From positions 186,001 through 250,000 of the IMG/VR virus record IMGVR_UViG_3300043399_000272: DNA of 64,000 bases; one strand, 5' to 3'. The first letter of the stretch is position 1, and each line of letters begins with the position of its first letter. A program made the translations under genes and the position numbers. The notes beneath the pieces were generated by a model. That model had not been told where the DNA came from, searched no databases, and saw only the letters and a list, made by a program, of their open reading frames with translations. Shown one piece after another: positions 15,955 to 52,675 of this stretch.

Positions 15955-16442
15955 AAGTAGGATTTAATTGTTCAAGTTTTGATTTGTTTCATGCTGGGCA
16001 TGTTACCATGCTTAAAATGGAAAAAAAGTTATGTGACTATCTAATTGTTGCACTTCAAGTTGATCCTACTATTGATAGGCCTGGCATCAAAAATAAACCT
16101 ACACAATCTGTCTATGAACGATACGTACAATTGCAGTCATGTAAATATGTAGACGAGATACTAGTATATTCTACCGAATATGACCTACTTCAATTATTGA
16201 TGACCCAAAAGATCGACATTCGTTTTTTGAGTGAAGAATATCTTAACAGAGATTTCACGGGCAAGCAATATTGCATTCAAAATGGAATCGAGTTATACTA
16301 TCACAAACGTGAACATGATTATAGTTCAACCGAGTTGCGTAACAGAATATATATGTTAGAAAAACTCAAGCGTGAAACAACTCAACCAGAAACAGAGATA
16401 CCGCAACACAGTCCTGAATTGGTTAAAAAGAATGAAATTTAA
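15951..16442 (+). CDS. cytidylyltransferase (TagD/glycerol-3-phosphate CTase-like)
   Basis: FDLFHAGH (HxGH), ER...SCKYVDE, SSTELR. Confidence 0.85.
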   Translation: MKVGFNCSSFDLFHAGHVTMLKMEKKLCDYLIVALQVDPTIDRPGIKNKPTQSVYERYVQLQSCKYVDEILVYSTEYDLLQLLMTQKIDIRFLSEEYLNRDFTGKQYCIQNGIELYYHKREHDYSSTELRNRIYMLEKLKRETTQPETEIPQHSPELVKKNEI

Positions 16443-17013
16443 TAGTGACATTGACATTGATTTTAGTAACCGTGATGATATACTAAAGCATATCAGGCAC
16501 ATACCTGCAGCCATGCGTAATGTTAATCCAATTCGTAAACATGCGACTGGAATCTATGTGACAGACATTCCATATGATGCAGTGAATGACATGGCTAACA
16601 TTGATTATGTAGAAGCAGAGGATCGTGGATATATTAAGTTAGATATGCTTAATGTGCATGTATATAATCAAGTCAAAGACGAAATGCACTTAATCGAGTT
16701 GATGCGTGAGCCTGACTGGAATAAGTTAAAAGATCGAGAATTTGTTGAAAAACTGATACACTTGTCAAATCACTACAATAGTCTTTGCAAAATGCCAGAA
16801 CCAGTTGACAGTATTCCTAGACTAGCTATGTTTTTGGCTATTATTCGTCCAGGAAAAAAGCATTTAATTGGTCTGCCCTGGAAAGAAGTAGCTAAAACTG
16901 TATGGGAAAAAGGAAGTGACGGGTATAGCTTCAAAAAAGCACATGCAATTGGGTATTCTTGGTTAGTAGCAGTTCATATGAACTTGCTTACAGAATCTTC
17001 TTCACAAGGGTAA
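16432..17013 (+). CDS. miniature DNA polymerase III alpha (DnaE), C-terminal catalytic half
   Basis: SDIDIDF, KHATGIYV, GYIKLDML, LAIIRPG and GYSFKKAHA occur in DnaE order within 193 aa. Confidence 0.85.
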   Translation: MKFNSDIDIDFSNRDDILKHIRHIPAAMRNVNPIRKHATGIYVTDIPYDAVNDMANIDYVEAEDRGYIKLDMLNVHVYNQVKDEMHLIELMREPDWNKLKDREFVEKLIHLSNHYNSLCKMPEPVDSIPRLAMFLAIIRPGKKHLIGLPWKEVAKTVWEKGSDGYSFKKAHAIGYSWLVAVHMNLLTESSSQG

Positions 17014-17377
17014 TTGATTTTCTTTTAGATTTCTTTTTACTGAGTTCAAGCATACTACATATAGGTCCGTGTAATACTGTCAAACTCTTATTGTTAAATG
17101 TTCTTAAGTAGGGCTTAAAGATAGCCCAGTCTTCTTTTAGAAACATATTAATGGGTACTAATCTGTTTGATTCCCACCACCAAACATCCCCTAATAACAA
17201 AAATTGCTCTCTTAACTCTTGTTGTGCTATAGATCCATAATCATATATAGTGGTGACTAAATCATCACGGTTTTGTACTATACCAACATAATCTTGGCCA
17301 GCATAGGAACAAACGGTGATGAATGGGTGATTTTCTGTTAGTTTTTTAAAGAAATCGTTATGAAGCATAAAAATCAA
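16988..17377 (-). CDS. hypothetical protein (late)
   Basis: 129 aa ORF; GATAAATA on minus strand at 17386-17393. Confidence 0.7.
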   Translation of the reverse strand: MIFMLHNDFFKKLTENHPFITVCSYAGQDYVGIVQNRDDLVTTIYDYGSIAQQELREQFLLLGDVWWWESNRLVPINMFLKEDWAIFKPYLRTFNNKSLTVLHGPICSMLELSKKKSKRKSITLVKKIL

Positions 17378-17417
17378 TTACCAAATATTTATCAAATCTC
17401 GTTACCCAATATATTTT

Positions 17418-17425
17418 TATAAATA
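17418..17425 (+). promoter_or_regulatory. T4-type late promoter TATAAATA (divergent pair with 17386-17393)
   Basis: Exact T4 gp55 consensus upstream of a structural-type gene. Confidence 0.7.
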
Positions 17426-17442
17426 TATAAAAGGAGCAAACT

Positions 17443-18213
17443 GTGTATTCAACAAGTGTTTATTTTTATATCCCAAGACAAACTGTTGTGGTTTACAGTG
17501 GCAATTCTACTAGGAGGTATGCGATTGTGTATGCTAAGAATCTAACATTGAACAAGGGCGTGGATAATAAAATCCAATTTCAGTTCTTAAACCAAGAACA
17601 AAAACCATTTGATATTACAGGTAAGAGTATTACCTTTAGACTATTAGATGAAAGTGGAAGTGAAATCTTATTGCAAAAAGGAGTATTACCTACACTAGCT
17701 TTAAAGGGAATATGTGAATTAACAACTACTGCAAGCGAAATTGAAGATATTAACCCACAGTATTGTTCATATAGTTTAGAAATCTCTGATAATGATTATG
17801 ATCTTCCGGTATTTGTTAGTTCAGAAGCCTCTGCAAGAGGGGCAGTTAGTGTTGTAGACAGTGTGTTTCCTAGTTTTGTTCCTGCAATAAATGTAGAAAT
17901 CCCCACACATTTGTTGCCTAATACTATCGCTAATACAAGCACTGTAAATTATTCAACTAGCATTATTAACACCAAAGATAATCCTATGCTAAGTATTCAG
18001 TGCTATCTTGACAGCTATAGTGGTACTGTCGAGATATATGGATCCACTATTTATAGCCCGGATTTGTCTGCAATAGGATATCAAATATCCAATAATGGTC
18101 CTTATACCACTGAATCTGGTTCTAAAGGCTATAGTATTTCAGGATATCACCCGTATGTGCAATTAAAATTTACCAGCACTGAGGGTAATGTCACCAAAGT
18201 ATTAGCCAGATAA
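17443..18213 (+). CDS. putative virion structural protein (Ig-like/beta-sandwich)
   Basis: Late promoter; S/T/Y-rich; C-terminal domain resembles 62368-62724. Confidence 0.55.
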   Translation: MYSTSVYFYIPRQTVVVYSGNSTRRYAIVYAKNLTLNKGVDNKIQFQFLNQEQKPFDITGKSITFRLLDESGSEILLQKGVLPTLALKGICELTTTASEIEDINPQYCSYSLEISDNDYDLPVFVSSEASARGAVSVVDSVFPSFVPAINVEIPTHLLPNTIANTSTVNYSTSIINTKDNPMLSIQCYLDSYSGTVEIYGSTIYSPDLSAIGYQISNNGPYTTESGSKGYSISGYHPYVQLKFTSTEGNVTKVLAR

Positions 18214-18215
18214 TA

Positions 18216-18244
18216 TTGATTTATTCTAGTAAGAAGTATACAAT
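18216..18244 (+). promoter_or_regulatory. sigma70-like promoter for primase-helicase
   Basis: TTGATT-17-TACAAT. Confidence 0.55.
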
Positions 18245-18250
18245 ATAAGA

Positions 18251-19222
18251 ATGTTCGACATTCTAGGTTTAATTCCGGGTAAAAAGAAGCATACAAACAG
18301 CGGGTGGACTAGCTTTAACGCAGTCTGCTGTAGCCATCGCGGCCATAATCCAGACAGAAGAATGCGAGGCGGGCTACGTATTGATGGAAATAATTGGGTG
18401 ATGCATTGCTTCAACTGCGGATATAGTTGTAGCTTTATGCTCGGTAGGAGTATAAATGCAAAAACCAGACAGTTCCTTATTTGGTGCGGAGTAGATAGTG
18501 AACAAGTACAAAAATGGAGTTTAGAAAGCCTTCAGAAAAAAGATTTGCTTCAACTATACCTAGAACAGAAAAAACGCTTTACGATTAAATTTAAATCTAA
18601 GAGGCTGCCGGACAATTCTGAACAAATTACTGAACAAGGTACTCATAAGTTCTATGTAGATTATTTGAAAAAGCGCAAAATAGACTATGAAAAATATGTT
18701 CTCTATTGCAACCCTTCCGGTGGTCAACGTAAAAAATATGGTATTATAATTCCCTACACATATAAAGGAAAAATAGTAGGACACACTACAAGGTTTCTGG
18801 ATAACAAAAGTCCTAAATATATCAATGAACAACAACAAGGCTATGTCTTTAATATTGACATGCAGAAACCAGAATGGAATGTATGCATTGTAACTGAAGG
18901 TATTTTTGATGCAATGGCAATCGATGGTGTTGCACTGATGCATGACGATATTAGTAATGAGCAAGCAATACTACTAAGTACACTAAACAGAAAAATTATT
19001 GTAGTGCCGGATTTTGACAAAACTGGTTTGAAAATTACAGATAGGGCGTTAGAACTTGGATATCATGTCAGCTTACCCAACTGGGGTCCTGATATTAAAG
19101 ACGTTAACGATGCAGTAGTAAAGTATGGTAAGCTCCCTACATTATTGGCAATACTTGAAAACGCAACGATGAGCAAGATAAAAATTGAAATGAGGAAGAA
19201 ACAGATTGCTAAAGGATTATAA
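18251..19222 (+). CDS. DNA primase (gp61-like)
   Basis: Zn ribbon CC...HCFNCG, KYIN, TOPRIM EGIFDA, PDFD, KDVND. Confidence 0.85.
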   Translation: MFDILGLIPGKKKHTNSGWTSFNAVCCSHRGHNPDRRMRGGLRIDGNNWVMHCFNCGYSCSFMLGRSINAKTRQFLIWCGVDSEQVQKWSLESLQKKDLLQLYLEQKKRFTIKFKSKRLPDNSEQITEQGTHKFYVDYLKKRKIDYEKYVLYCNPSGGQRKKYGIIIPYTYKGKIVGHTTRFLDNKSPKYINEQQQGYVFNIDMQKPEWNVCIVTEGIFDAMAIDGVALMHDDISNEQAILLSTLNRKIIVVPDFDKTGLKITDRALELGYHVSLPNWGPDIKDVNDAVVKYGKLPTLLAILENATMSKIKIEMRKKQIAKGL

Positions 19223-20633
19223 TATTGATGTACAGACCCTATTTCTGCGTATGTTAGTAACAAACGCAGAATTGTTTACAAGGGTTACAAACATCATGAA
19301 TCCACAAAACTTTGATAAGTCTCTCAGACCTGTGGCTGAGCTACTTAAGGAGCACAGTGAAAAATACAGTGTGTTACCTTCTCCTGAACAAATCAAAGCA
19401 ACGACTGGAGTTGAAATTGATGTAGTACCAGAGTTAAACGAAGGTCACTCTGAATGGTTTTTAGATGAATTTGAAAAATTTACTAAGCGCCAAGAACTTG
19501 AACGTGCTATCCTTCAAGCAGCCGATATGCTTGAAAAGGGTGATTACGGTCCTGTTGAAAAGATGATTAAGGACGCTGTACAAATCAGTTTACAAAAAGA
19601 CATGGGTACAGATTACTTTGCTGACCCCAAGACACGAATTAATAAGTATTTCAATGCAGGTGGGCAGGTTAGTACAGGATGGCCACAACTTGACAGACTA
19701 CTATATGGTGGTTTTAGTCGGGGTGAACTAAACATCTTTGCAGGTGGTTCTGGTTCAGGTAAGTCTTTGGTTATGATGAATATTGCATTGAACTGGTTGA
19801 ACGTAGGTCTAAGTGGTGTTTACGTTTCACTAGAACTTTCAGAAGAACTAACATCATTGCGTACTGATGCGATGTTGACCAGTATGAGTACCAAAGATAT
19901 TCGCAAAGATATTGATTCTGCTGAATTGAAGATTAAAATGATGAGTAAGAAGTCTGGTCAATATCGAGTTAAAGGTATGCCTGCACAATCTAACGTTAAC
20001 GATATTCGTGCTTATTTGAAAGAAGTACAAATTCAGACAGGAATCAAAATTGATTTTGTGATGATTGATTATTTGGATCTGGTTATGCCCGTGTCTGTTA
20101 AAGTAAATCCCAATGATCAGTTTATCAAAGACAAGTATGTTTCAGAAGAATTGCGTAACTTAGCAAAAGAGCTAGGCATTTTAATGGTAACTGCATCTCA
20201 GTTGAATCGTAGTGCTGTAGAGGAAATTGAGTTTGATCATAGTCACATTGCAGGTGGCATTTCAAAGATTAACACTGCGGATAACGTCTTTGGTATATAT
20301 CGTACTAGAAGTATGATGGAGCGAGGAAAGTATCAGATTCAATGTATGAAATCTCGTAGTAGTACAGGCGTAGGTCAAAAAATCGATTTAGACTATAATA
20401 TGGAAACTATGCGTATTACAGATGATGATCCTGAAGGATACGCAGACCAGCAAGCAAAGTATAAACAGCAACCTAGTGCAAATGACATAATGAGTAAATT
20501 GAAGCCGCAAAGCACTATAACAACAAACGATCAGGTTCAGTCTTTTGTCCAACCAGAAGCAAAACGAGTAGTAGGTGATGTTCAGGGTGCTAAATTAAAA
20601 GCACTATTGAATACGATTCAAAAAGATAAATAA
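19206..20633 (+). CDS. replicative DnaB-like helicase (gp41-like)
   Basis: STGW, GGSGSGKS, SLEL, IDYLD, TASQLNR, KSR. Confidence 0.9.
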   Translation: MLKDYNIDVQTLFLRMLVTNAELFTRVTNIMNPQNFDKSLRPVAELLKEHSEKYSVLPSPEQIKATTGVEIDVVPELNEGHSEWFLDEFEKFTKRQELERAILQAADMLEKGDYGPVEKMIKDAVQISLQKDMGTDYFADPKTRINKYFNAGGQVSTGWPQLDRLLYGGFSRGELNIFAGGSGSGKSLVMMNIALNWLNVGLSGVYVSLELSEELTSLRTDAMLTSMSTKDIRKDIDSAELKIKMMSKKSGQYRVKGMPAQSNVNDIRAYLKEVQIQTGIKIDFVMIDYLDLVMPVSVKVNPNDQFIKDKYVSEELRNLAKELGILMVTASQLNRSAVEEIEFDHSHIAGGISKINTADNVFGIYRTRSMMERGKYQIQCMKSRSSTGVGQKIDLDYNMETMRITDDDPEGYADQQAKYKQQPSANDIMSKLKPQSTITTNDQVQSFVQPEAKRVVGDVQGAKLKALLNTIQKDK

Positions 20634-20651
20634 TAGTAGGACATATTTATT

Positions 20652-20891
20652 ATGCAAAGAAAAACTCGTAGCTTACTAGAGGAATTAGAGTCCCTAGGAC
20701 AAAATCGTGATACTAAGCATATCATCGAAAACCGAGCCCAACATATCATCACTAGTGCTATAAATTTGCTAGAAATGATCAATAAATATTACGATCCTGA
20801 CAAGGCCCAGATCCTAGAGCGTAAACTTTTAAACGCAATCAAGACTAGAGATCAAGAAAAATTCAGCAAATCCATCAAAAAAGATAGTTAA
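20652..20891 (+). CDS. small late protein
   Basis: GATAAATA at 20625-20632; N-terminal SLLEE. Confidence 0.65.
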   Translation: MQRKTRSLLEELESLGQNRDTKHIIENRAQHIITSAINLLEMINKYYDPDKAQILERKLLNAIKTRDQEKFSKSIKKDS

Positions 20892-20978
20892 AAATCTATC
20901 TGCAAACCCAACTTTTTTTGCAAAAGGCATAAATAAAAGTAGAGCCTATATGGCTCAACTATTTAAAGGAAAATTAAA

Positions 20979-21368
20979 ATGGCACAACAAACTAAAGTTC
21001 ACGGTGATTTCAAAGGCGTAGCTAACTATGACGTTCGTGATTATACAGTAGGTTCTCTAAATGCAGTTACTTCTGCTCAAACAGTACAACCACAAGGTCC
21101 TAAGCTAGACTTTGGTACTATCACTTTCACAGGTGCAGCAAGCCCATCATTAGCTGACATCAAGACAGCTATTGACACAATCCAACAATTAGCAGTTGTT
21201 TATGTATATGAGTATACTGAAGTTGGTGACAATACTGACACTCTAGCAGTTGCAGTATACCCAACAGGTGCATGGGATTTCGCAAACGGTGGTTCTTTAG
21301 ACGCAGCTTTAACTTCTGCTCTAGGATATGCTGTTACTACAGCCGCTACAGCAACATTCACTAACTAA
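20979..21368 (+). CDS. probable abundant virion protein (monocistronic late gene)
   Basis: CATAAATA at 20928, SD aagga, own terminator, Ala/Thr-rich. Confidence 0.6.
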   Translation: MAQQTKVHGDFKGVANYDVRDYTVGSLNAVTSAQTVQPQGPKLDFGTITFTGAASPSLADIKTAIDTIQQLAVVYVYEYTEVGDNTDTLAVAVYPTGAWDFANGGSLDAALTSALGYAVTTAATATFTN

Positions 21369-21383
21369 TTTAAAACTTAGTCT

Positions 21384-21413
21384 AAAAACCCGAGAATATT
21401 CTCGGGTTTTTTT
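21384..21413 (+). terminator. rho-independent terminator
   Basis: aaaaacccgagaa-ta-ttctcgggttttttt. Confidence 0.85.
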
Positions 21414-21431
21414 ACCTCTATAAATATCATT

Positions 21432-21890
21432 ATGAGTTATAGAATAAGATGCTATACGTTATTTGATATCACGCAAACCGGAGTTTTGATTAGACGACCC
21501 CCGATAAATTTGTCAGACGACCAAAGAGTCGATTGGGAAAATCGCAGAAATTCACAGTCTAATTTTGACACGGTTGTTCAGGTGATAAATCTAAGAAGCC
21601 AACCTGAAGAAATGTCAATAACTACCTCGTCTTACATCAACTTCAAAGAATTTCAAAACTTTGGATTTATGTATGAAGATGAAGAAGATCAAATGTGTTG
21701 GCAATTTGATTTTTCGATTAGACATAAAAGTGTATTTGACGACGGAGTAAGTGAACTAGGAGCATTATTCGATGATTGCGAAGGTGTACCTATGATTAAA
21801 CACGGTATAAAGTGGGAGAAACTTGCATCATTTTTAGATACATCCCCTGAATTTCGAAATATTTATTTTGAGGTACTATCAAATGAGTGA
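21432..21890 (+). CDS. hypothetical late protein
   Basis: TATAAATA at 21419-21426. Confidence 0.7.
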   Translation: MSYRIRCYTLFDITQTGVLIRRPPINLSDDQRVDWENRRNSQSNFDTVVQVINLRSQPEEMSITTSSYINFKEFQNFGFMYEDEEDQMCWQFDFSIRHKSVFDDGVSELGALFDDCEGVPMIKHGIKWEKLASFLDTSPEFRNIYFEVLSNE

Positions 21891-22356
21891 GCAAAACATG
21901 TTTGACATTCTTAAAAAGATGTTAGATAAAACTAATATCACCGAACTTTCAGAAAAATTGGTGTTAACGACTGAAAGCGGTTATGAATTATTTGGAAAAT
22001 ACGTAATAACACATGTAAATAATCAGTATATAGTTTCTGCTCATAAGAGGCACCTGTCACAATCATTTTATACATTAAAAAATGCAGTAATATGGACTAC
22101 CTTATACGCTAATAATAAGATATCAGATTCTAAAAGAATTTTAGATTTAGATGTTGCCTTAGAAGGTGCAAACTTTGAAATAAAATTACATGATACTTTA
22201 GCCAAAAAAGCTAAATCGTTAGAAGCTAAATCAATCCATGCAACCAAAGTTGTAGAAAATAAACACCGAAAATACCTTATAAATCGTGAATTAGCTGAAT
22301 ATGAGGAGAGAGTCAAGAAATGGCAATATACTCAGTTCTCTAAGATAACTGCCTAA
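21883..22356 (+). CDS. hypothetical protein
   Basis: ATG after gaggt; overlaps previous stop. Confidence 0.65.
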   Translation: MSEQNMFDILKKMLDKTNITELSEKLVLTTESGYELFGKYVITHVNNQYIVSAHKRHLSQSFYTLKNAVIWTTLYANNKISDSKRILDLDVALEGANFEIKLHDTLAKKAKSLEAKSIHATKVVENKHRKYLINRELAEYEERVKKWQYTQFSKITA

Positions 22357-22406
22357 AAATAATTTAGAAAAAGATAAATACATAATCAGTACTCTAGGAC
22401 AATACT

Positions 22407-23123: not shown

Positions 23124-23126
23124 AAT

Positions 23127-23456: not shown

Positions 23457-23465
23457 CCAAATAGA

Positions 23466-23494
23466 TTGTACTATGTAGAAATATATAGTACAAT
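23466..23494 (+). promoter_or_regulatory. sigma70-like promoter
   Basis: TTGTAC-17-TACAAT. Confidence 0.5.
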
Positions 23495-23500
23495 TTTTTT

Positions 23501-44551: not shown

Positions 44552-47500
44552 ATGGCTCAACAATACATAGACTTTGGTACATTTCCAAACGATCCATCGG
44601 CTGATCCGATTCGATCAGCATTTCAGAAAATAAACGAAAACTTCAATGAACTTTACGGTACTTTTTTCTCGTCCGGTGTTACATCTATTACCACTACTGG
44701 TGGTATTACAGCTCCGGCAGGAGGAACAGGGGACGTATTAATTGAGGGTAATTTCCCTAGAATTCAGATTATTACAGGTAGTAATTTAACAGTTGGAGCA
44801 GGTGCACCTAACACTACCCAGTCAGCAAATATCACTACCTTTTCTGTTCCGTTTTATTTAGATTTAGCTAATTCGATTAATACACAATCAGCTACTTTTA
44901 CAACAGGTGTAACTACATCTAATCTTAGCGTAGGCAACGTAGTAACTAGCTCATTAATTCCCAATGCATCTACCGGTCAATTAGGAAATAGTACCAATAG
45001 ATGGGGTAATTTATTTGTTACTTCTAATATAAATTTAGGAGCAGCAGCCAATAGTCAAACGATTAGATCAAACACTTCAGGTGTAATTCTAACTAATCTT
45101 TTTGTAACATCAAACACTGTAATAGGTAATGCTAACATCACCGGATTAGTTACTGCAGGCAATGCTACTGTGACAGGTCTAACGACTACAAATAATTTAA
45201 CAGTAACTGGAAATTTGATCGGTAACTTAATTCCTGATCAAGACGAAGTTTATAATTTAGGTAGCCCCACACGTAAGTTTAAAGAATTATTTCTTGCTGC
45301 GAATACTTTGACATTGGGTGCAGTTACAATATCAGCAGACTCAAATAGCATTATTGTTCCTAATTTATCAGTCACTGACACAATCAGTGTAGGTACGATA
45401 ACTGCAGGATTTGTCGACGGTATAATAACTGCAACATCACAACCATTAATTACTAGTTTGGGCGCATTAAGCAACTTGACTGTTGCTGGTTGTGTAGCGA
45501 TTGGTAATACATTAATTGATTCTAACGGGGCAATCACAGTAGGTAGTACAGTTATTGATCCTTCCGGTAACATTATACTACCGGCTAATGGTACAATTAC
45601 TGGAACAGTTATTACTCCACCGGGCGGAACAGTTAGTGCTCCGGGTTCTAATACACAAATCTTATTCAATGATGACGGTAACTTAGCAGCAGTTCCAGGA
45701 CTACAATTCAACAAAGTAACTAGTTTATTAAGTATTTCAGGTAATGTAGCAGGAGGAAACTTAGTATCTTCAGGTGCTCTATCAGTTACTGGTAACGGTA
45801 GTGTAGGCGGCACATTTAGTGCTACTGGAAATGTGAACGCTGGCAATTTAATTACCTTAGGTGTTTTAAGTGCTAGCGGCAATATTTCAGGCGGTAATAT
45901 TTCAACTAATGGATTCTTACAAGTAGTAGGCAATGCTAGTTTGGGCAATATTACAACAACTAGAATAGATGGTACTATAGTTAGTGTATCGGGTAATATT
46001 TCAGGCGCTAACTTAATTGCTAGCGGTATAATGCGAGTAGACGGTAACGCAAACGTAGGTAACCTAACTACTAGTGGTTTAGTGTCAGCCGCAACAATAA
46101 ATGCATCAGGAAATGTGTCTGCTGGTAATATTAGTGTTTCCGGATCACTAGCAGTTGACACATTATCAGGAAATAACTTAAGTTCTAGTGGCAACTTAAC
46201 TGTTACCGGTAATTCTTCTTTAGCAAATGCAATAGCTACAAGTCTATCTGCTATAGGTAATATTTCAAGTAGTAATTTAAATATTACCGGTAATTCTTCT
46301 TTAGCAAATGCAATAGCTACAAGTCTATCTGCTATAGGTAATATTTCAAGTAGTAACTTAATCATCACTGGTAATTCTACACTAGCTAATGCATTGGCTG
46401 CGAGTCTTGCAGCTACGGGTAATGTTTCAGGTGGAAACATATTGACTGGTGGACTAATTAATGCTACTGGTAATATATTAGGTGGTAACTTATCCACCAC
46501 TGGTGTAGTTTCTGCTACAGGTAATGTTTCAGGTGGCAATATAACAACTACAGGGTTAATCACTGCGAATGGCACCATCGTCGGCGGCAATCTATCCACT
46601 GCTGGTGTAGTTTCTGCTACAGGTAATGTTTCAGGTGGAAACTTAACTACAAACGGATTAATTGTAGCTACAGGCAATGTCTCAGGTGGTAACTTATCTA
46701 CTACAGGTGTAGTCTCTGCTACAGGTAATATATTAGGTGGTAACTTATCTACTACAGGTGTAGTCTCTGCTACAGGTAATATATTAGGTGGTAACATTAA
46801 TGCTAACGGTAGCGTTACAGGTAACTTGTTTAGTGCTAATTTCTTCAGCGGTGATGGAAACAGCATAACAAACTTGAATGCGTTAAATGCTAAGAATAAG
46901 ATTGTGCCAACTGGTTTATTAATTGGTTCAGGAACAGCAACTATAACTTTCTCTACGCAATCTTTTGCCCCGTTTGATATTGGACAAACAGTAAATGTTT
47001 CAAACATTTTACCAAGTGGATTAAACGGTTCACAGACCATTACGTTCTGCAACGCAGACACATTAACATTTAGTACTGCACTAACCTCAAACGTTGGATT
47101 TGTGCCAGGTACATCAATAGTATCAGGTGACATTAAAGTTTCAAGTGCTATAAGTGCTGCTTCGGCAAATACTGCTAATTCTGCGAATACTGCTAACTCA
47201 GCAACGATTGCTGGACAAGTTACAGGTGCAACACAAGGAAACATCACAAGTGTAGGAACTTTAGTAGGATTGACTGTTGCTCCAACTGGATCAATAACCG
47301 GTGCTAATACTATTTCAGGTAATTTTATTTCAGGTAATTTTGTTCTTGCAAGTGTTACTAGTGGCATCGTTGCTTCTGGTACTACTCAAAGCACCGCATA
47401 TCCGTTGATTAGTCAATATAATGTTGTTTCTACTTCTAGTACAGGAACTGCTGATGGTGTACGTTTACCAACAGCTACAGTGGGTATGCAAGTTATTATC

Positions 47501-47662
47501 ATCAATAATACTGCAAACAGTGTTAAAGTTTATCCAGCATCAAGTGCAAAAATAGATTCCCTAGCAACAAATGCATCATTCTCATTGGGTACAGGTGCAA
47601 GACTATTATTAGTAGCAACAGGGATTTCTCAGTGGTACACAATGGTTGGTGTTTACGGTTAA
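44552..47662 (+). CDS. long tail fibre with gp9/gp10-like N-terminus
   Basis: DPIRSAFQKINENFNELY resembles the T4 gp9/gp10 N-terminus; GN(V/I)SGGN repeats; late promoter at 44522. Confidence 0.75.
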   Translation: MAQQYIDFGTFPNDPSADPIRSAFQKINENFNELYGTFFSSGVTSITTTGGITAPAGGTGDVLIEGNFPRIQIITGSNLTVGAGAPNTTQSANITTFSVPFYLDLANSINTQSATFTTGVTTSNLSVGNVVTSSLIPNASTGQLGNSTNRWGNLFVTSNINLGAAANSQTIRSNTSGVILTNLFVTSNTVIGNANITGLVTAGNATVTGLTTTNNLTVTGNLIGNLIPDQDEVYNLGSPTRKFKELFLAANTLTLGAVTISADSNSIIVPNLSVTDTISVGTITAGFVDGIITATSQPLITSLGALSNLTVAGCVAIGNTLIDSNGAITVGSTVIDPSGNIILPANGTITGTVITPPGGTVSAPGSNTQILFNDDGNLAAVPGLQFNKVTSLLSISGNVAGGNLVSSGALSVTGNGSVGGTFSATGNVNAGNLITLGVLSASGNISGGNISTNGFLQVVGNASLGNITTTRIDGTIVSVSGNISGANLIASGIMRVDGNANVGNLTTSGLVSAATINASGNVSAGNISVSGSLAVDTLSGNNLSSSGNLTVTGNSSLANAIATSLSAIGNISSSNLNITGNSSLANAIATSLSAIGNISSSNLIITGNSTLANALAASLAATGNVSGGNILTGGLINATGNILGGNLSTTGVVSATGNVSGGNITTTGLITANGTIVGGNLSTAGVVSATGNVSGGNLTTNGLIVATGNVSGGNLSTTGVVSATGNILGGNLSTTGVVSATGNILGGNINANGSVTGNLFSANFFSGDGNSITNLNALNAKNKIVPTGLLIGSGTATITFSTQSFAPFDIGQTVNVSNILPSGLNGSQTITFCNADTLTFSTALTSNVGFVPGTSIVSGDIKVSSAISAASANTANSANTANSATIAGQVTGATQGNITSVGTLVGLTVAPTGSITGANTISGNFISGNFVLASVTSGIVASGTTQSTAYPLISQYNVVSTSSTGTADGVRLPTATVGMQVIIINNTANSVKVYPASSAKIDSLATNASFSLGTGARLLLVATGISQWYTMVGVYG
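46203..46356 (+). repeat. 81-nt-period tandem duplication (73 nt identical) in fibre gene
   Basis: ttaccggtaattcttc...tcaagtagtaa at 46203 and 46284. Confidence 0.9.
46684..46795 (+). repeat. 51-nt (17 aa) tandem repeat in fibre gene
   Basis: aggtggtaacttatctactacaggtgtagtctctgctacaggtaatatatt x2; degenerate copies extend upstream. Confidence 0.9.
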
Positions 47663-47673
47663 TAGGAGTTTTT

Positions 47674-48297
47674 ATGATTACAGTAGATATTTTACAAAAA
47701 ATATGCCCAAAGACGAAAACGGCAGTATTAGAAAGATATGCGTTACCTCTTCACGAAGTAGCAGAGTACTACGATATGTACAAAAATCCAAAACGTGCGG
47801 CTGCCTTTTTAGCACAAATCGCACACGAGTCAGGTGGATTTAATTTTGTAACAGAAAATTTAAACTACAGTGCTAAGGGGTTGATGACTACTTTCAAAAA
47901 GTATTTCCCAACAGAAGAATTAGCAAAGCAATATGAGAGAAAGCCTGAAAAGATTGCTAATCGTGTTTATGCTAATCGAATGAGTAACGGAGATGAAAAT
48001 AGTGGTGATGGCTGGAAGTTCAGAGGTCGTGGATTAATACAATTGACAGGCCGAGCTAACTATACACGGTTTGCCGAAGACTTAGGCATTAGCCTTGACG
48101 AAACGGTTGCATATTTAGAAACTCCTGCAGGCGCAGTTTCTAGTGCAGGATGGTTCTGGGATAACAATAACTTAAATCAGTTATGTGATAAAGATGATTT
48201 CGTGACTCTTACGAAAAGAATTAACGGTGGCACTATTGGTTTAGAAGATAGAAAACATCACTATCATATTGCATTAGAGGCATTAGGCGTTCACTAA
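47674..48297 (+). CDS. glycoside hydrolase family 19 endolysin
   Basis: FLAQIAHESG, ENLNYS, GRGLIQLTG..NY, INGG..GL.DR. Confidence 0.9.
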   Translation: MITVDILQKICPKTKTAVLERYALPLHEVAEYYDMYKNPKRAAAFLAQIAHESGGFNFVTENLNYSAKGLMTTFKKYFPTEELAKQYERKPEKIANRVYANRMSNGDENSGDGWKFRGRGLIQLTGRANYTRFAEDLGISLDETVAYLETPAGAVSSAGWFWDNNNLNQLCDKDDFVTLTKRINGGTIGLEDRKHHYHIALEALGVH

Positions 48298-48298
48298 C

Positions 48299-50449
48299 AT
48301 GTCACAACTATTATGGAATACACCTGCAGGTAATATAGGTACTTATCCTAGTCGATTGCCTATAACTTACACATTTTCTGCCATTGCACCTACTGTGGGA
48401 GACAGTGTAGAATACATTCTATTAAACGGAGTATTGCCTATTGGTGTAAGTCTTCTCAGTAACGGACAGTTAACAGGTGTTATTGGTAGCATCGCTGAAG
48501 AAACCGTATATAGTTTTACGATACGTGCTAAAGATAGTTTTAATTCTATATCAGATAGAACATTCTCGTTGACCGTATCAGGTGTAGGTATACCTGTTAT
48601 TTCAACTCCTGACGGTCAAATAGCTAACACATTAGATAGTGTGTATGTTGATAAGACCATTAATGTCACAAACTATGCTAATATACCTTATATTATTAAA
48701 CTGTCTGGTGGAAGTCTTCCGCCTGGGTTATCAATATCTAATACAGGTAGAATAACAGGATATGCAGAACCACCTATTTTAACCAATGGTTCACCTACTA
48801 CTAAAACATACGAATTTGCATTACAACTAATTAGTGAGTACGGTGTCGATGGTGGAATTTTCAATATAGTAGTTCGAAATCAATTGTTAACAAAATCCCC
48901 ACACCAGATCAATCCTGTAATTTTAAATAGTTACCCATTGGAATTGCCTATTAGTACTACTGATCCTTATTATTCTTATTATTTGGTTGACACTATAAAT
49001 CTAGGTACAACTAAATCCGGTGAGTACTTCAACTTTAAATTTATAGGTTATGATTTTGAAGATGATAGTTTGACATATTCTTTCGGTTCTTTACCACCGG
49101 GATTAACTGGAAACAGTACTACTGGTTGGATTACGGGAGTACCGATCATTGCATCTAATACGATAATAGAGTATGGTTTTACTGTTGTAGTATATAAAAC
49201 ATTATATCCTAGTATTAAGTCCTCTATCCAGCGATTTGTTATTCGAGTTTCTAACGAAGTTGATGAAACAATTACATGGAATACTGATTCGGATTTAGGT
49301 ACATTACTAAATGGGGAACTAAGTGATTTGTATGTTGATGCAACTGGATTTGGCAATCTTTCCTACGAATTAGTATCCGGTAGATTACCTGATAATCTAT
49401 CTTTGTTATCTAATGGTAGCATTATTGGAAAAGTATCATTTGAGCCTGAATCTTTTCTAACTATGGTTGGTACTAAAATAACATATGCATTTACAGTTAA
49501 AGCATTCTTAACGGACAATCCTATCGTTTCTTCAACAAAAGAATTTACTTTAACAACAGACAAACAGTTCTTAGAGCCAACTGAAAGTGTTTATTTGAAA
49601 GCGACACCTGATCTGCCTGGTCGTGCTATTATTCAATCATTGTTGACTGACACCTCTATAATTCCTAACGAATATTTGTATAGACCGGAAGATGTTTATT
49701 TTGGTAAAGCGTCGGATATTAGAGTTGTAGTGACATATGGAGTTAATGCTAGTAAATTAACAACGTATTTGGACACATTGAACACAAACTTTTATTATAG
49801 AAAAATAGTATTAGGTGAATTAAAAACTGCGATTGCAACAAATGAAAACAACGAAACACTGTATGAAGTTGTCTATTCTGAGATAGTAGACGGCTTAATA
49901 ACACCCGACGGAGTGTCAATACCGGATGAGATAGTTTGGCCTAGAAAAATAAGTTTGAACCAAGGTGATTATTATACTTCCAATACCTCTATATATAATA
50001 GCTCGACAGAAGTATTCACTAGTGCTAGTCCTGGATTTGTTCAAAAACTGTATCCAGCAAGTTTACAGAATATGAGAAATAAAATAATTTCTACTATTCC
50101 GTATAATAACAGTCAAACATTTTTACCACTTTGGATGACTAGTCAGCAGGCTGATGGTAGTACATTGGGATTTAAGCAAGTTTGGGTAATATGTTACACG
50201 TTGCCCGGAAAGTCACAGGAAGTTTTGAACAATATTAATGATTCCTGGCCATACAAACTTAACCAAATTGATTTCTCAATTGATCGTTTTATAGTAGATA
50301 AGAGCGCAACATACAATTATAACTTGTATCCAGGTATTCCTAGCTGGAGTTCATTACCAGGTGCAACGCCAACACCTGATCCGTTGGATACATATGATTT
50401 ACCTGTGCTGTTTTCGAACACAAACATTTTACCTAACAGTAATCAATAA
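48299..50449 (+). CDS. structural protein with repeated Ig-like (He_PIG-type) domains
   Basis: Repeated G.LP.GL.L...G.ITG motifs. Confidence 0.7.
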   Translation: MSQLLWNTPAGNIGTYPSRLPITYTFSAIAPTVGDSVEYILLNGVLPIGVSLLSNGQLTGVIGSIAEETVYSFTIRAKDSFNSISDRTFSLTVSGVGIPVISTPDGQIANTLDSVYVDKTINVTNYANIPYIIKLSGGSLPPGLSISNTGRITGYAEPPILTNGSPTTKTYEFALQLISEYGVDGGIFNIVVRNQLLTKSPHQINPVILNSYPLELPISTTDPYYSYYLVDTINLGTTKSGEYFNFKFIGYDFEDDSLTYSFGSLPPGLTGNSTTGWITGVPIIASNTIIEYGFTVVVYKTLYPSIKSSIQRFVIRVSNEVDETITWNTDSDLGTLLNGELSDLYVDATGFGNLSYELVSGRLPDNLSLLSNGSIIGKVSFEPESFLTMVGTKITYAFTVKAFLTDNPIVSSTKEFTLTTDKQFLEPTESVYLKATPDLPGRAIIQSLLTDTSIIPNEYLYRPEDVYFGKASDIRVVVTYGVNASKLTTYLDTLNTNFYYRKIVLGELKTAIATNENNETLYEVVYSEIVDGLITPDGVSIPDEIVWPRKISLNQGDYYTSNTSIYNSSTEVFTSASPGFVQKLYPASLQNMRNKIISTIPYNNSQTFLPLWMTSQQADGSTLGFKQVWVICYTLPGKSQEVLNNINDSWPYKLNQIDFSIDRFIVDKSATYNYNLYPGIPSWSSLPGATPTPDPLDTYDLPVLFSNTNILPNSNQ

Positions 50450-50472
50450 TAAATATATTACGGAATACAAAT

Positions 50473-51264
50473 ATGAGCGCAATAAACACTAACAGTATCG
50501 ATGCTAATTACCCTGTGCCGGGCGTTAATAATAGCACACAGGGTTTTAGAGATAACTTTTCAAGCATTAAGAATAACTTAAATACGGCAGGATCTGAATT
50601 AACAGACTTGCAATCCAAAGCAATATTAAAGTCACCGTTGACTGGTACATTGTTGAATAATGATATGGCTGGTGCTCCGCTAAGCAATGCACTAGTAAAT
50701 GGATTTAGAGCCAAGACATATAATTTAGGTGAAAATTTATCAGGAACAGTAACTGTTAATGTCAGCAAAGCTGATGTGCAGTACGGTACAATACAGTCAG
50801 ATTGCACTATCAACTTTGGTGGCTGGCCACCTACAGGAACTAGGGCAAGTGTCGAACTACATTTAACTATTGCTAATCCTAATGTAACAATTACATTACC
50901 GCCCACTACAGTTAACGCAGGTGAAATAACTTCAGGTATGCGTGATAGTGTTAAATTGTTGGAAAATTATTATGCTACCGGTACTACCGCTTCATATAGT
51001 AATTTTATCACTACCCCATATCAAGTAACTGAATTGGTATTGCAATTTATAACACTTGATTGTGGCGCCACGTTAGATGTGATTCCTGTGAATCGAAACC
51101 AACGTAGTTCCCAGTTATCAATTAGGACTCCTACTAGTATAGGACAACCTGGAGACTTTCCTGGACAAATGTGTATGGATCAAAATGGGTACGTTTACTT
51201 TTGTGTAGGTCAATATGACGGTGAAAACGTTATTTGGGGTAAAGTAACATTATCCGGAATTTAA
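50473..51264 (+). CDS. tail/baseplate-associated structural protein
   Basis: Late promoter at 50448; FRDNFSSIK N-terminal motif; C-terminal G..GQMC.D..YVYFC. Confidence 0.6.
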   Translation: MSAINTNSIDANYPVPGVNNSTQGFRDNFSSIKNNLNTAGSELTDLQSKAILKSPLTGTLLNNDMAGAPLSNALVNGFRAKTYNLGENLSGTVTVNVSKADVQYGTIQSDCTINFGGWPPTGTRASVELHLTIANPNVTITLPPTTVNAGEITSGMRDSVKLLENYYATGTTASYSNFITTPYQVTELVLQFITLDCGATLDVIPVNRNQRSSQLSIRTPTSIGQPGDFPGQMCMDQNGYVYFCVGQYDGENVIWGKVTLSGI

Positions 51265-51296
51265 TAAACCGATAATTGTTGCATATAAATATCAAT

Positions 51297-51533
51297 ATGC
51301 AACACCCATTCATAAACGATCTTAGTGGTAAGTCTATGGAAGACTTGCAAAACACAATCCAAGAACTAACCAAAAAATTAAATTTTGTATATAGGACTCA
51401 GAACGGTCCTATGATATCGCAAATCCAAATGGTTTTAGAAAGTTACAAAACTGAGTACACCAAACGAATGGATGATATCTACAAAAAACAAAACTTAACA
51501 AATAAAATTAACATTTCCAACGATAATAAATGA
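51297..51533 (+). CDS. small coiled-coil late protein
   Basis: TATAAATA at 51284. Confidence 0.6.
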   Translation: MQHPFINDLSGKSMEDLQNTIQELTKKLNFVYRTQNGPMISQIQMVLESYKTEYTKRMDDIYKKQNLTNKINISNDNK

Positions 51534-52129
51534 CAGCCCGAGTACAGCGAAACTTTGAGTTTGTGGCAGGTGTATTCATTGACAATGAGTTGCACATGAA
51601 TGTATACGACATAGAAGTCAATTTCTTCATTGAAACTGACAGCATCTATGAACAAAATATTGCCCTTGACAGAATAAAATATTTGTTTATTGAAAAAATA
51701 GAAAATGCAATTTTTATAAATGAGACAGAATCGGTAATTTTTGAGAAAATATCTAATTTAGGTTTAAAATGTGTGCAACTACCAGAAGATCCGTACGATC
51801 AAATTTTGGGAATCGCATTAATGGCAAAAATAGATTCTGTTATAGAAGACCGTTTAACTGTTTCTGATATAAGAATTTCTAGTAGGATGAGCGATGGTGT
51901 GAGCTATCTACACAGTATGGAAGAAAGTAGGGGTCCGCTCAGCGAAAAAGGTTGGTGGAATGATTCAAGCCCGAATACATCAACTAAACCCACAAAAAAT
52001 AAAAAGGTTGTGAAGTTAAAAGAAATAACTACTAGTTGGGATGACTTACTGCTTGGTTGGCAACCACCGATAAAAAGACCCGATTCTGACGTTATTATGG
52101 TAGACTTTGATTCTAAAACGGATAAATGA
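51530..52129 (+). CDS. hypothetical protein, possible degenerate QueD/PTPS T-fold
   Basis: FEFVAG...HMNVYDIEV...IFINE...EDPYDQILG spacing resembles QueD; catalytic His residues mostly absent. Confidence 0.4.
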   Translation: MTARVQRNFEFVAGVFIDNELHMNVYDIEVNFFIETDSIYEQNIALDRIKYLFIEKIENAIFINETESVIFEKISNLGLKCVQLPEDPYDQILGIALMAKIDSVIEDRLTVSDIRISSRMSDGVSYLHSMEESRGPLSEKGWWNDSSPNTSTKPTKNKKVVKLKEITTSWDDLLLGWQPPIKRPDSDVIMVDFDSKTDK

Positions 52130-52132
52130 TAT

Positions 52133-52161
52133 TTGCTTTTTTGTAATAAGTCTGCTAAACT
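52133..52161 (+). promoter_or_regulatory. sigma70-like promoter with extended -10 for the DnaE N-half
   Basis: TTGCTT-17-TAAACT with TGn. Confidence 0.5.
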
Positions 52162-52168
52162 AGTAGCA

Positions 52169-52675
52169 ATGAAAACTGACCAGTATAGCCGACAGATTTT
52201 ATCAGAAGATGATTTGTGTGACATTTTCCTACGAAATCCAGAACACAAACTATCAACGGTATTAACCGATACAGTAATACATTTTCATCCAGATTTAGAA
52301 TTAAATAATACTTTTCATACAACAGAACCTACTACACAAACTATCAGCGTGTCAGAATTTGATGATATAAATCAATCAACATGGTTTATGCCTGATGAAT
52401 ATAAGTCAATGGATATTGCTAAATATCTTTTAGATTTATGCACCTCAGATGAAGAATTACAGCGTGTAGGTAAAGAACTTATTCTTTATCAAGAAAGGAA
52501 TATGTTTCCCTTGCTTAGATTCTGCAAATACTTGGTAGACACAATGAGAGCTAATAATGTAGTATGGGGAGTAGGTAGGGGAAGCAGTGTTAGTAGTTAT
52601 GTACTGTTTTTGCTAGGAGTACATAAGATAAATTCAATATATTACGATTTGGATGTAGAAGAATTTTTAAAATAA
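52169..52675 (+). CDS. miniature DNA polymerase III alpha (DnaE), N-terminal half
   Basis: RV.KEL..Y, YLVD, VWGVGRGSSVSSYVLFLLGVHKINSIYYDL.VEEFL matches DnaE GPGRGSAAGSLV.Y.LGIT.IDP..YDLLFERFL. Confidence 0.85.
   Translation: MKTDQYSRQILSEDDLCDIFLRNPEHKLSTVLTDTVIHFHPDLELNNTFHTTEPTTQTISVSEFDDINQSTWFMPDEYKSMDIAKYLLDLCTSDEELQRVGKELILYQERNMFPLLRFCKYLVDTMRANNVVWGVGRGSSVSSYVLFLLGVHKINSIYYDLDVEEFLK

What the first reader, a model, noticed from the sequence alone, without database searches (positions are those of the whole stretch)
16432..52675. Intein-free, split and heavily miniaturised family-C (DnaE) polymerase encoded by two genes about 35 kb apart
Seen in sequence: ORF 52169-52675 (168 aa) carries the DnaE GRGS motif and ends ...LLGVHKINSIYYDLDVEEFLK. 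ORF 16432-17013 (193 aa) begins MKFNSDIDIDF and continues through KHATG, GYIKLDML, LAIIRPG and GYSFKKAHA. Established: bacterial DnaE reads continuously GPGRGS...LGIT.IDP..YDLLFERFLNPER.SMPD(F/I)D(V/I)DF, and the catalytic Asp triad lies in DxD plus KxD. So the two genes meet exactly at one junction and keep all three Asp residues. The total is about 360 aa against about 1160 aa for E. coli DnaE; PHP, most thumb/finger insertions, the clamp-binding region and the OB fold appear missing. No intein ends are visible, unlike the cyanobacterial split dnaE. Inference: this is a heterodimeric minimal polymerase or nucleotidyltransferase in a T4-type replisome, which normally uses family-B gp43. It may have a specialised job such as priming, repair, lesion bypass or nucleotide transfer. 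The N-half has its own sigma70-like promoter, consistent with both halves being expressed early.
Basis: partly seen in the sequence, partly recalled or inferred. Interest (0 to 1): 0.9.

Follow-up and report, generated by a model that had tools for sequence, protein, structure and literature searches.

The report
Split mini Pol III, jumbo phage
An uncultivated giant phage encodes a stripped-down core of the bacterial replicative DNA polymerase (Pol III alpha) as two small genes 36 kb apart; the feature is real and under strong selection, but the same split enzyme family was described by sequence analysis in 2021 and its job is still untested.

Summary
ORF 52169-52675 (168 aa) is the N-terminal, dNTP-binding part of a family-C polymerase palm. 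ORF 16432-17013 (193 aa) carries the three catalytic Asp and a cut-down finger. The two abut within about two residues of E. coli DnaE numbering, and there is no room for intein parts.

Both halves belong to very large metagenomic families. They co-occur in about 90 jumbo myoviruses, lie on one strand 30-44 kb apart in most relatives, keep the same neighbours, and are under strong purifying selection. I also found natural single-chain fusions (375-376 aa, four samples) joined at exactly the predicted junction. Their AlphaFold model matches only Pol III alpha/PolC structures. Nearly all residues that touch the dNTP, primer end and templating base in E. coli Pol III are kept, including the steric-gate His.

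This is not new. Iyer et al. 2021 (Viruses 13:63) described this "minimal, split Pol III alpha" in group 2.2 jumbo phages that also carry PolB. The window holds a new, divergent member (42-46% identity to PA5oct). Activity and role remain untested.

The parts
52169..52675 (+). N-half of the minimal Pol III alpha (168 aa). Residues ~65-168 form the N-terminal part of the Pol-beta-like palm, with the invariant GS motif G136-R137-G138-S139 (= E. coli G361-R362-G363-S364). Residues 1-64 are a variable N-terminal extension.
   Evidence: ORF. Pfam PF07733 at 4.6e-9. phrog_11127 at 6.5e-44. Profile against PDB matches E. coli alpha 320-392. Invariant columns. dN/dS is 0.09-0.19 where computable.
16432..17013 (+). 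C-half of the minimal Pol III alpha (193 aa). It carries the catalytic D6/D8 (= E. coli D401/D403), K69/D71 (= K553/D555), R139-P140-G141 (= R639-P640-G641) and the helix-loop-helix Y165-F167-K169-H171 (= Y754, F756, K758 and the steric-gate H760). The thumb and most of the fingers are deleted.
   Evidence: ORF. phrog_11778 at 7.6e-54. Profile against PDB gives three collinear blocks. Conservation counts. AF2 pLDDT 96.1, and the top 11 Foldseek hits are all Pol III alpha. dN/dS is 0.04-0.08.
16988..17377 (-). Conserved small gene of unknown function (phrog_11637). It lies tail-to-tail with the C-half and overlaps its 3' end by 26 nt. It is a constant neighbour and possible partner; no role is shown.
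   Evidence: phrog_11637 at 8.7e-32. Homologues sit in the same position in PA5oct, GAP32, Vibrio phage 2.275.O and after the fused gene in L006.
18251..20633 (+). Context: DnaG/Toprim-type primase (18251-19222) and DnaB/gp41-type helicase (19206-20633). They lie two genes downstream of the C-half in all compared phages.
   Evidence: phrog_47 at 4.3e-37 and Toprim. phrog_19 at 3.7e-72. Same order in PA5oct, GAP32 and the Vibrio phage.
53021..55313 (+). Context downstream of the N-half: GroES-like (53021-53392), Bax1-I/YccA-like membrane protein (53703-54389) and a gp44/RFC-type clamp-loader AAA+ (54390-55313). A GroES-type gene follows the N-half in PA5oct, GAP32 (there labelled head morphogenesis; equivalence assumed from position and size) and the Vibrio phage. 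An annotated clamp loader was seen only in GAP32.
   Evidence: Pfam Cpn10, Bax1-I, AAA/Rad17/DNA_pol3_delta2. Synteny.

Best explanation
The two genes encode the two chains of one minimal family-C (Pol III alpha-type) nucleotidyltransferase. It belongs to the 'split minimal Pol III alpha' family of group 2.2 (RaK2/121Q/PA5oct/Atu_ph07-like) jumbo myoviruses.

The gene break falls inside the Pol-beta-like palm. The N-half supplies the GS motif that holds the dNTP sugar and triphosphate. The C-half supplies the two-metal Asp triad, the Lys that holds the primer-terminal phosphate, the RPG loop under the templating base, and the helix-loop-helix with the base-stacking Tyr and the steric-gate His. 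Neither chain can be active alone, so they must associate non-covalently, without an intein, to form an active site.

Shown here: homology, collinearity with DnaE, retention of active-site residues, selection, co-occurrence, and natural fusions.

Inferred: the complex is a template-directed, dNTP-selective DNA polymerase. Its processivity is probably low, because the thumb, the clamp-binding motif, the OB fold and the PHP domain are absent. It would work beside the phage PolB replisome.

My best guess for its role, given with low confidence, is short-patch synthesis tied to priming or Okazaki-fragment handling, because the C-half is always next to the primase-helicase genes.
For: - Pfam and PHROG hits.
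- Profile hits to solved Pol III alpha in collinear blocks.
- The AF2 model of the natural fusion has pLDDT 83.6 and pTM 0.80. Its only significant PDB matches are 15 C-family polymerase chains (E 2.5e-8 to 2.9e-4, TMq 0.47-0.58); the next hit has E 4.2.
- The window C-half model has pLDDT 96.1, and its best hits are again Pol III alpha.
- Active-site residues are conserved: D6 84/85, D8 84/85, K69 85/85, D71 85/85, R139 and P140 85/85, H171 83/85, and GRGS 46/46. These are the residues within 4 A of the dGTP, template or primer in the E. coli ternary complex. H760 is the steric gate.
- Fusions P0274, P0391 and P0392 occur on four contigs from four samples and join the halves at the predicted point. 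The fusion matches a full-length DnaE PHROG contiguously across the junction at 2.2e-15.
- The halves are found in 90 and 96 phage records with the same taxon distribution. Six IMG/VR contigs hold both, on the same strand, 35-43 kb apart. Synteny is conserved.
- dN/dS is 0.04-0.19 with saturated dS.
- At least 7986 clusters at 90% identity exist for each half, with fixed lengths.
Against: - No biochemical or genetic data exist for any member; I found no follow-up work.
- E. coli R390 contacts the dGTP, and R390A lowers catalytic efficiency 27-fold. Its counterpart here is an invariant Glu, E165.
- The index-finger region carrying R709/K714/K715 is deleted, as are the thumb, PHP domain, clamp-binding motif and OB fold. 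Templated synthesis on duplex DNA is therefore not guaranteed.
- Association of the two separate chains was not modelled, because the tools take no concatenated chains. Only the natural fusion was folded.
- PolB was not found in the window, nor within 10 kb upstream in close relatives. Its presence rests on the literature for related phages.
Confidence: 0.7

Rival explanations
1. The two chains do assemble, but the enzyme is not a templated DNA polymerase. It would be a different Pol-beta-fold nucleotidyltransferase, for example untemplated 3'-tailing, nucleotidylation of a protein or primer, or synthesis of a signalling nucleotide. It would have kept only the catalytic shell of DnaE.
For: About 70% of DnaE is lost, including the thumb, index finger, clamp-binding motif and OB fold. 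R390 is replaced by an invariant Glu. The phage relatives already have a PolB replicase. A sugar-nucleotide and exonuclease gene cluster lies directly upstream.
Against: The residues that form the nascent base-pair pocket are conserved, not only the metal ligands. These are R639-P640-G641 under the templating base, Y754 stacking on the incoming base, K553 on the primer phosphate and the steric-gate H760. That conservation is hard to explain without a primer-template substrate and dNTP selection.
Confidence: 0.18
2. The halves are independent proteins with separate functions or separate partners. Their joint presence would merely reflect shared ancestry in one phage lineage.
For: They are never adjacent in the split genomes. 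They sit in different gene neighbourhoods, one with primase-helicase and one with GroES (a clamp loader follows in the window and in GAP32). They evolve at different rates: 76% against 62% identity for the same pair of contigs.
Against: The break lies inside the minimal nucleotidyltransferase core, so neither half has a complete active site. Natural fusions join them in the DnaE order at the DnaE junction. The fused model folds as one Pol III-like unit. The two halves have the same distribution across phage records.
Confidence: 0.06
3. The genes are decaying remnants of a captured host dnaE (pseudogene fragments). Alternatively, they are joined after translation by a split intein or by recoding.
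For: Earlier genome papers called the N-half a 'truncated' Pol III alpha. A split dnaE joined by an intein is known in cyanobacteria (my own knowledge).
Against: dN/dS is 0.04-0.19. Thousands of diverged copies keep fixed lengths and intact motifs. There is no Hint/intein domain and no spare residues at the junction. The fusions show a plain 9-10-residue linker without a Cys/Ser/Thr splice junction.
Confidence: 0.02

Closest known systems
Split minimal DNA polymerase III alpha of group 2.2 jumbo phages (Iyer, Anantharaman, Krishnan, Burroughs & Aravind 2021, Viruses 13:63; PHROGs 11127 + 11778)
   Same: It has two standalone proteins from distant genes: an N-terminal NTP-binding part and a C-terminal Mg2+/template-binding part. 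No other Pol III domains are present. The context is a jumbo myovirus with T4-type replication genes.
   Different: The sequence is only 42-46% identical to the nearest cultured phage proteins, those of PA5oct. It sits in an uncultivated 260-kb IMG/VR contig. The single-chain fused variants found here are not mentioned in that paper as far as I read it.
Bacterial DnaE / PolC (family-C replicative polymerases; PDB 2hnh, 2hpi, 3e0d, 5lew, 3f2b)
   Same: It shares the Pol-beta-like palm with the GS motif, the DxD plus KxD catalytic residues, the RPG loop and the Y-x-F-x-K-x-H helix-loop-helix. The order of elements is collinear.
   Different: It has 361 aa in two chains against about 1160 aa in one. 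It lacks the PHP domain (E. coli 1-270), the thumb (433-510), fingers ~642-739 and beyond ~780, the beta-clamp motif, the OB fold and the tau-binding end; domain boundaries are from my recollection of Lamers et al. 2006. R390 is replaced by an invariant Glu.
Cyanobacterial split dnaE joined by a split intein (my own knowledge; not tested here beyond the absence of an intein)
   Same: A family-C polymerase is encoded by two distant genes.
   Different: In cyanobacteria the break lies in the fingers region and the halves are ligated by protein trans-splicing. Here the break is inside the palm between the GS motif and DxD, there are no intein parts, and the chains must stay separate.
Minimal Pol-beta-fold nucleotidyltransferases (the superfamily with hG[GS] ... 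DxD ... D motifs)
   Same: It shares the core fold and motif order. The size of the reconstituted core is similar.
   Different: Here the DnaE-specific finger elements that build a base-pair pocket are kept, and Foldseek finds only C-family polymerases as significant matches.

Membership tests
Family-C polymerase catalytic core (Pfam PF07733 DNA_pol3_alpha) | Significant match to the family model above the curated cut-off | tested here: met
   The N-half scores 36.7 bits against a 23.9-bit cut-off, E 4.6e-9. The C-half alone has no Pfam hit, but its profile hits solved Pol III alpha at 3e-5.
Family-C polymerase catalytic core (Pfam PF07733 DNA_pol3_alpha) | GS motif (E. coli R362-G363-S364) that binds the incoming dNTP | tested here: met
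   R137-G138-S139 is invariant in 46/46 N-halves. The role of the motif is described.
Family-C polymerase catalytic core (Pfam PF07733 DNA_pol3_alpha) | Catalytic Asp triad (E. coli D401, D403, D555) and K553 | tested here: met
   D6 84/85, D8 84/85, D71 85/85 and K69 85/85.
Family-C polymerase catalytic core (Pfam PF07733 DNA_pol3_alpha) | Finger helix-loop-helix with Y754 and steric-gate H760, and the R639-P640-G641 loop | tested here: met
   Y165 63/85 (+5 F), F167 69/85, H171 83/85, R139 and P140 85/85. Mapping is and roles.
Family-C polymerase catalytic core (Pfam PF07733 DNA_pol3_alpha) | Pol III alpha-like three-dimensional fold | tested here: met
   For the fused relative, 15 C-family chains match at E <= 2.9e-4 and nothing else matches. 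For the window C-half, the top 11 hits are all Pol III alpha, with E from 3e-3.
Full-length DnaE/PolC replicase | PHP domain, thumb, complete fingers, clamp-binding motif and OB fold in one chain | tested here: not met
   Only E. coli residues ~320-392, ~398-430, 539-641 and 740-767 have counterparts. No PHP hit was found. It is therefore not a DnaE/PolC orthologue, only a derivative of their core.
Full-length DnaE/PolC replicase | DNA-dependent DNA polymerase activity | not testable with these tools
   This needs protein expression and primer-extension assays.
Split minimal Pol III alpha of group 2.2 jumbo phages (Iyer et al. 2021) | Two standalone genes, N-part and C-part, distantly located in one genome | tested here: met
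   The starts are 35,737 nt apart on one strand. The same holds in PA5oct (43.6 kb), GAP32 (34 kb), Vibrio 2.275.O (30 kb) and six IMG/VR contigs.
Split minimal Pol III alpha of group 2.2 jumbo phages (Iyer et al. 2021) | Jumbo myovirus with T4-type replication genes | tested here: met
   The contig is 260,148 nt. The window holds a tail sheath, DnaB/gp41-like helicase, primase, clamp loader and RecA/UvsX-like protein.
Split minimal Pol III alpha of group 2.2 jumbo phages (Iyer et al. 2021) | Accompanied by a family-B DNA polymerase in the same genome | not tested
   PolB is not in the 64-kb window, and not within 10 kb upstream in close relatives. The rest of the contig could not be read. The literature reports PolB in RaK2 (gp100), CBB (CBB_263) and group 2.2 in general.
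Intein-split DnaE (cyanobacterial type) | Intein N- and C-fragments flanking the break | tested here: not met
   No Hint/intein domain was found. The N-half ends on DnaE-homologous residues, and the C-half has only five residues before the DxD.

The most novel reading that the evidence does not exclude
The pair is a genuine template-directed DNA polymerase of about 40 kDa in two chains, the smallest family-C polymerase. Its activity would exist only when two separately transcribed subunits meet. It would act with the neighbouring primase-helicase as a primer-extension or hand-off polymerase for the PolB replisome, analogous to DnaE handing off to PolC in Bacillus. The derived re-fusions would show that the split is tolerated but not required.
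Probability: 0.2. Interest if true: 0.7.

Novelty: new member of a known kind. Interest (0 to 1): 0.4.

Why it matters
If the complex is active, it defines the minimal set of elements a family-C polymerase needs: palm, RPG loop and one helix-loop-helix, about 300 residues. That bears on the origin of bacterial replicases, a point already raised by Iyer et al. 2021, and offers a very small polymerase scaffold.

The family is not rare. Each half has at least about 8000 clusters at 90% identity in public metagenomes, so it is a widespread but biochemically untouched component of large aquatic and enteric phages.

For this scan, the main message is that the finding is correct but already published. 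It deserves a moderate score, not a high one. The natural fused forms, the nesting of the fusions within split forms, and the residue-level match to the new E. coli ternary complex are the additions made here.

Tried and rejected
- Single-sequence phmmer of each half against the PDB was too weak: N-half E 0.8, C-half nothing. Profiles were needed.
- Large MAFFT alignments that mixed fused proteins with many halves stacked the N-halves onto the C-half region (A2 and A4). Only the 27-row A3 was usable, and it still misplaces the last ~9 N-half residues.
The natural fusion was folded instead.
- The search for PolB failed. GAP32 250-285 kb has none. An exact-protein look-up of the window's RecA-like gene failed. 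The 10 kb upstream in close relatives L170 and L171 holds terminase, not PolB.
- The PA5oct omics paper gives no per-gene timing for gp220 or gp288 in its main text.
The single-protein scan found no relative in 185,579 species genomes, but that scan only sees close relatives.
- The sigma70 promoter idea is rejected.
- The pseudogene and intein ideas are rejected.


Full report
**1. What is in the sequence**

Both ORFs are present as described, on the + strand.
- The N-half is 52169-52675 (168 aa). It carries GVGRGS and ends ...YYDLDVEEFLK.
- The C-half is 16432-17013 (193 aa). It begins MKFNSDIDIDF and carries KHATG, GYIKLDML, LAIIRPG and GYSFKKAHA.
- The two starts are 35,737 nt apart.
- The C-half ATG overlaps the stop of the upstream cytidylyltransferase-like gene by 11 nt. 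The N-half follows a 39-nt spacer.
- The window is part of IMG/VR contig UViG_3300043399_000272, 260,148 nt.
- The window also holds a tail sheath, a DnaB/gp41-type helicase, a primase, an RFC/gp44-type clamp loader, a RecA/UvsX-like protein, GroES and a Lon-like protease. It is therefore a jumbo myovirus with T4-type replication genes.

**2. Is it a Pol III alpha core?**

Sequence evidence:
- The N-half passes Pfam's curated threshold for DNA_pol3_alpha (E 4.6e-9, profile positions 19-94 of 260).
- Both halves match PHROG families labelled DNA polymerase: phrog_11127 at 6.5e-44 and phrog_11778 at 7.6e-54.
- A profile of 85 diverse C-halves hits solved Pol III alpha chains (Taq 2hpi/3e0d at 3e-5; E. 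coli 2hnh at 8e-5; M. tuberculosis 5lew/7pu7). The match falls in three collinear blocks, equal to E. coli ~398-430, 539-641 and 740-767.
- A profile of 46 N-halves hits E. coli 320-392.

From the printed alignments the residue map is:

| Window residue(s) | E. coli residue(s) |
|---|---|
| N-half R137-G138-S139 | R362-G363-S364 |
| C-half D6 / D8 / D10 | D401 / D403 / D405 |
| C-half K69 / D71 | K553 / D555 |
| C-half R139-P140-G141 | R639-P640-G641 |
| C-half G164-Y165-S166-F167-K168-K169-A170-H171 | G753-Y754-G755-F756-N757-K758-S759-H760 |

The last N-half residue falls at about N393, and the first C-half residue at about 396. The two genes therefore abut with roughly two DnaE residues missing and no overlap.

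**3. Structure**

- AlphaFold2 on the window C-half, with 85 homologues, gives pLDDT 96.1 and pTM 0.89. Its 11 best PDB matches are all Pol III alpha, with E from 3e-3 and probability 0.96-1.00 for the first eight. After those come only chance-level hits.
- The natural single-chain relative P0274 gives pLDDT 83.6 and pTM 0.80. Residues 80-375 are mostly above 90 (the ~10-residue linker at the junction averages about 57), and the first 78 residues are poorly defined.
- Foldseek finds 15 significant PDB chains for P0274, all family-C polymerases: Taq, M. tuberculosis and E. coli alpha, and PolC. E values run from 2.5e-8 to 2.9e-4 and TMq from 0.47 to 0.58. The next hit has E 4.2.

**4. What is kept and what is lost**

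A 2026 preprint on the E. coli Pol III ternary complex lists the residues within 4 A of the incoming dGTP and the templating base. They are R362-G363-S364, D401/D403, Y754/F756/N757/H760, R390, R709/K714/K715, and R639-P640-G641/G753. It adds K553 on the primer phosphate; R362A and K553A are dead. H760 is the steric gate against rNTPs.

Conservation in the phage family:
- GRGS is kept in 46/46 N-halves.
- D6 and D8 are kept in 84/85 C-halves.
- K69, D71, R139 and P140 are kept in 85/85.
- H171 is kept in 83/85.
- Y165 is kept in 63/85, with 5 more carrying F. F167 is kept in 69/85.

Two things differ:
- The R390 position is an invariant Glu (E165, 46/46), followed by an invariant Phe and a terminal Lys/Arg.
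- The index-finger stretch with R709/K714/K715 is deleted. The RPG loop is followed directly by K142 (77/85) and K/R143.

Missing altogether are the PHP domain, the thumb, most of the fingers, the clamp-binding motif, the OB fold and the tau-binding end (domain limits are from my recollection of Lamers et al. 2006).

Retention of the base-pair pocket, not just the metal ligands, is my main reason to favour a templated, dNTP-selective polymerase. This is inference.

**5. Do the halves belong together?**

- *Distribution.* tblastn finds the N-half in 90 and the C-half in 96 phage records, with the same taxon distribution: Escherichia 33/34, Pseudomonas 11/11, Klebsiella 10/11, Salmonella 8/8, Erwinia 8/8 and so on. 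All listed complete genomes are jumbo myoviruses. The Vibrio phage missing from the listed N-half hits does carry a 122-aa N-half.
- *Same contig.* In IMG/VR, six contigs appear in both top-80 lists. In each, the C-half lies upstream on the same strand, 35.3-42.5 kb away. The gap is 43.6 kb in PA5oct, about 34 kb in GAP32 and CBB, and 30 kb in the Vibrio phage. It is about 180-220 kb in Atu_ph07 and Phosso.
- *Synteny.* At 38-46% protein identity the neighbourhoods are conserved. The C-half is followed by an overlapping minus-strand small gene, a gene annotated as a virion structural protein in PA5oct and GAP32, a primase and a DnaB helicase. The N-half is followed by a small protein, then a GroES-type gene (labelled head morphogenesis in GAP32); a clamp loader comes next in the window and GAP32.
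- *Natural fusions.* P0274, P0391 and P0392 (375-376 aa, 78-81% identical to each other) lie on four contigs from four samples. P0274 residues 75-180 align with window N-half 65-168 (43% identity, 1e-26). Residues 190-372 align with C-half 5-181 (40% identity, 8e-44). A 9-10-residue linker sits where DnaE has NPER..P. The fused protein matches both PHROGs end to end. It also matches a full-length DnaE PHROG without a break across the junction (residues 102-207 = profile 358-462, 2.2e-15).
- *Direction of change.* In a maximum-likelihood tree of C-halves, the fused clade (100/100) is nested four well-supported nodes deep among standalone C-halves. The fusion therefore looks derived: the split came first and was later undone in one small lineage. 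The tree's bootstrap had not fully converged, so this is a reasonable but not final reading.

**6. Selection**

- Synonymous sites are saturated against all available relatives.
- Where dS could be computed, dN/dS is 0.04-0.08 for the C-half and 0.09-0.19 for the N-half. Elsewhere pN/pS is 0.18-0.38.
- N-half residues 1-64 are much less conserved (33-49% identity) than residues 65-168 (67-75%). They are absent from the Vibrio phage protein and poorly predicted in the model.
- Each half has at least 7986 clusters at 90% identity, with lengths fixed near 168 and 193 aa. The C-half has 379 clusters at 50% identity.
- Pseudogene remnants are excluded.

**7. Claims that do not hold**

- The promoter scan finds no sigma70-like site upstream of 52169. 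Promoter-like hits in 51200-53100 are at chance level: 10 against 8.4 +/- 3.3. The TTGCTT-17-TAAACT that can be read there scores 8 of 12 and would leave no leader.
- Expression timing is unknown. The only T4-late-type TATAAATA near the N-half is at 51284, two genes upstream.
- PolB is not in the window and could not be checked for this contig. It is reported for RaK2 (gp100), CBB (CBB_263) and group 2.2 phages in general.

**8. Comparison with what is known**

Iyer et al. [quoted passage not shown] They suggest a role in synthesis of one strand or in repair.

Earlier genome papers had noted only a 'truncated' Pol III alpha (CBB_328). I found no experimental follow-up, and a 2026 review of jumbo phages does not mention the enzyme.

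The window's proteins are a divergent new member from an uncultivated lineage. They are 42-46% identical to PA5oct and have thousands of closer metagenomic relatives. A single-protein scan of 185,579 species genomes found no close cellular relative. That agrees with 'phage-specific', but the scan is insensitive.

**9. Verdict**

- The feature is a new member of a known, computationally described kind. Its function is still untested.
- Interest is 0.4. The feature is a real and widespread oddity with an open biochemical question, but it is not a discovery.

Noticed in passing
window 16988-17377 (-); L001 4581-4979 (-); L003 3909-4262 (-); L004 3232-3609 (-); L006 1641-2000 (-): A small gene of unknown function (phrog_11637) always lies tail-to-tail with the C-half and overlaps its 3' end, by 26 nt in the window. 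It has a WWW(E/Q)S.R..PI motif and a basic KKRIKRR-like tail. It also follows the fused single-chain gene. It may be a partner of the mini-polymerase, or its position may simply be constrained.
   Followed up: partly
L005 1066-2193; L006 519-1649; L007 1827-2957; L008 1292-2422: These loci hold natural single-chain fusions of the N- and C-halves (375-376 aa) in four metagenome samples. In the C-half tree they are nested within split forms, so the fusion looks secondary. In L007 and L008 a C5 DNA methyltransferase gene overlaps the start of the fused gene.
   Followed up: yes
window 52169-52360 (N-half residues 1-64): The N-terminal extension of the N-half carries a weakly conserved D.YGR.I.SE.DL motif. 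It evolves much faster than the catalytic part, is absent from the 122-aa Vibrio phage protein, and is poorly predicted by AF2. Its role is unknown; it could be a docking segment.
   Followed up: partly
window 52661-52672 (N-half E165-F166-L167-K168): The position of E. coli R390 is an invariant Glu in all 46 N-halves. R390 is a dNTP contact, and R390A lowers catalytic efficiency 27-fold. The chain always ends in Lys or Arg three residues later.
   Followed up: partly
window 14088-16442: Directly upstream of the C-half, in the same gene string, lie four genes: a ROK-family sugar kinase (14088-14924), an Rv2179c-like DEDD 3'-5' exonuclease (14927-15496, PF16473 6e-33), a cupin/epimerase-like protein (15493-15954) and a cytidylyltransferase-like protein (15909-16442). 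I did not test whether the exonuclease could proofread for the mini-polymerase.
   Followed up: no
window 53703-54389: This is a strong Bax1-I / YccA-type membrane protein (PF01027, E 1.5e-54) between GroES and the clamp loader. It is unusual cargo for a phage. A Lon-like AAA+ protease lies at 59191-61464.
   Followed up: no
window 17418, 21419, 51284 (+); 18048 (-): The T4-late-type motif TATAAATA occurs only 4 times against 8.95 expected. The + strand copy at 17418 lies 18 nt before the start of the gene at 17443 (whose counterparts in PA5oct and GAP32 are annotated as virion structural proteins); 21419 lies just before the ORF start at 21432, and 51284 lies at the 5' end of the small ORF 51276-51533. 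They may be real late promoters.
   Followed up: partly
window 45250-47367 (-) inside 44552-47662 (+): A 705-aa antisense ORF lies within a 1036-aa ORF that has no PHROG hit. It is probably a compositional artefact of a large structural gene. I did not examine it.
   Followed up: no
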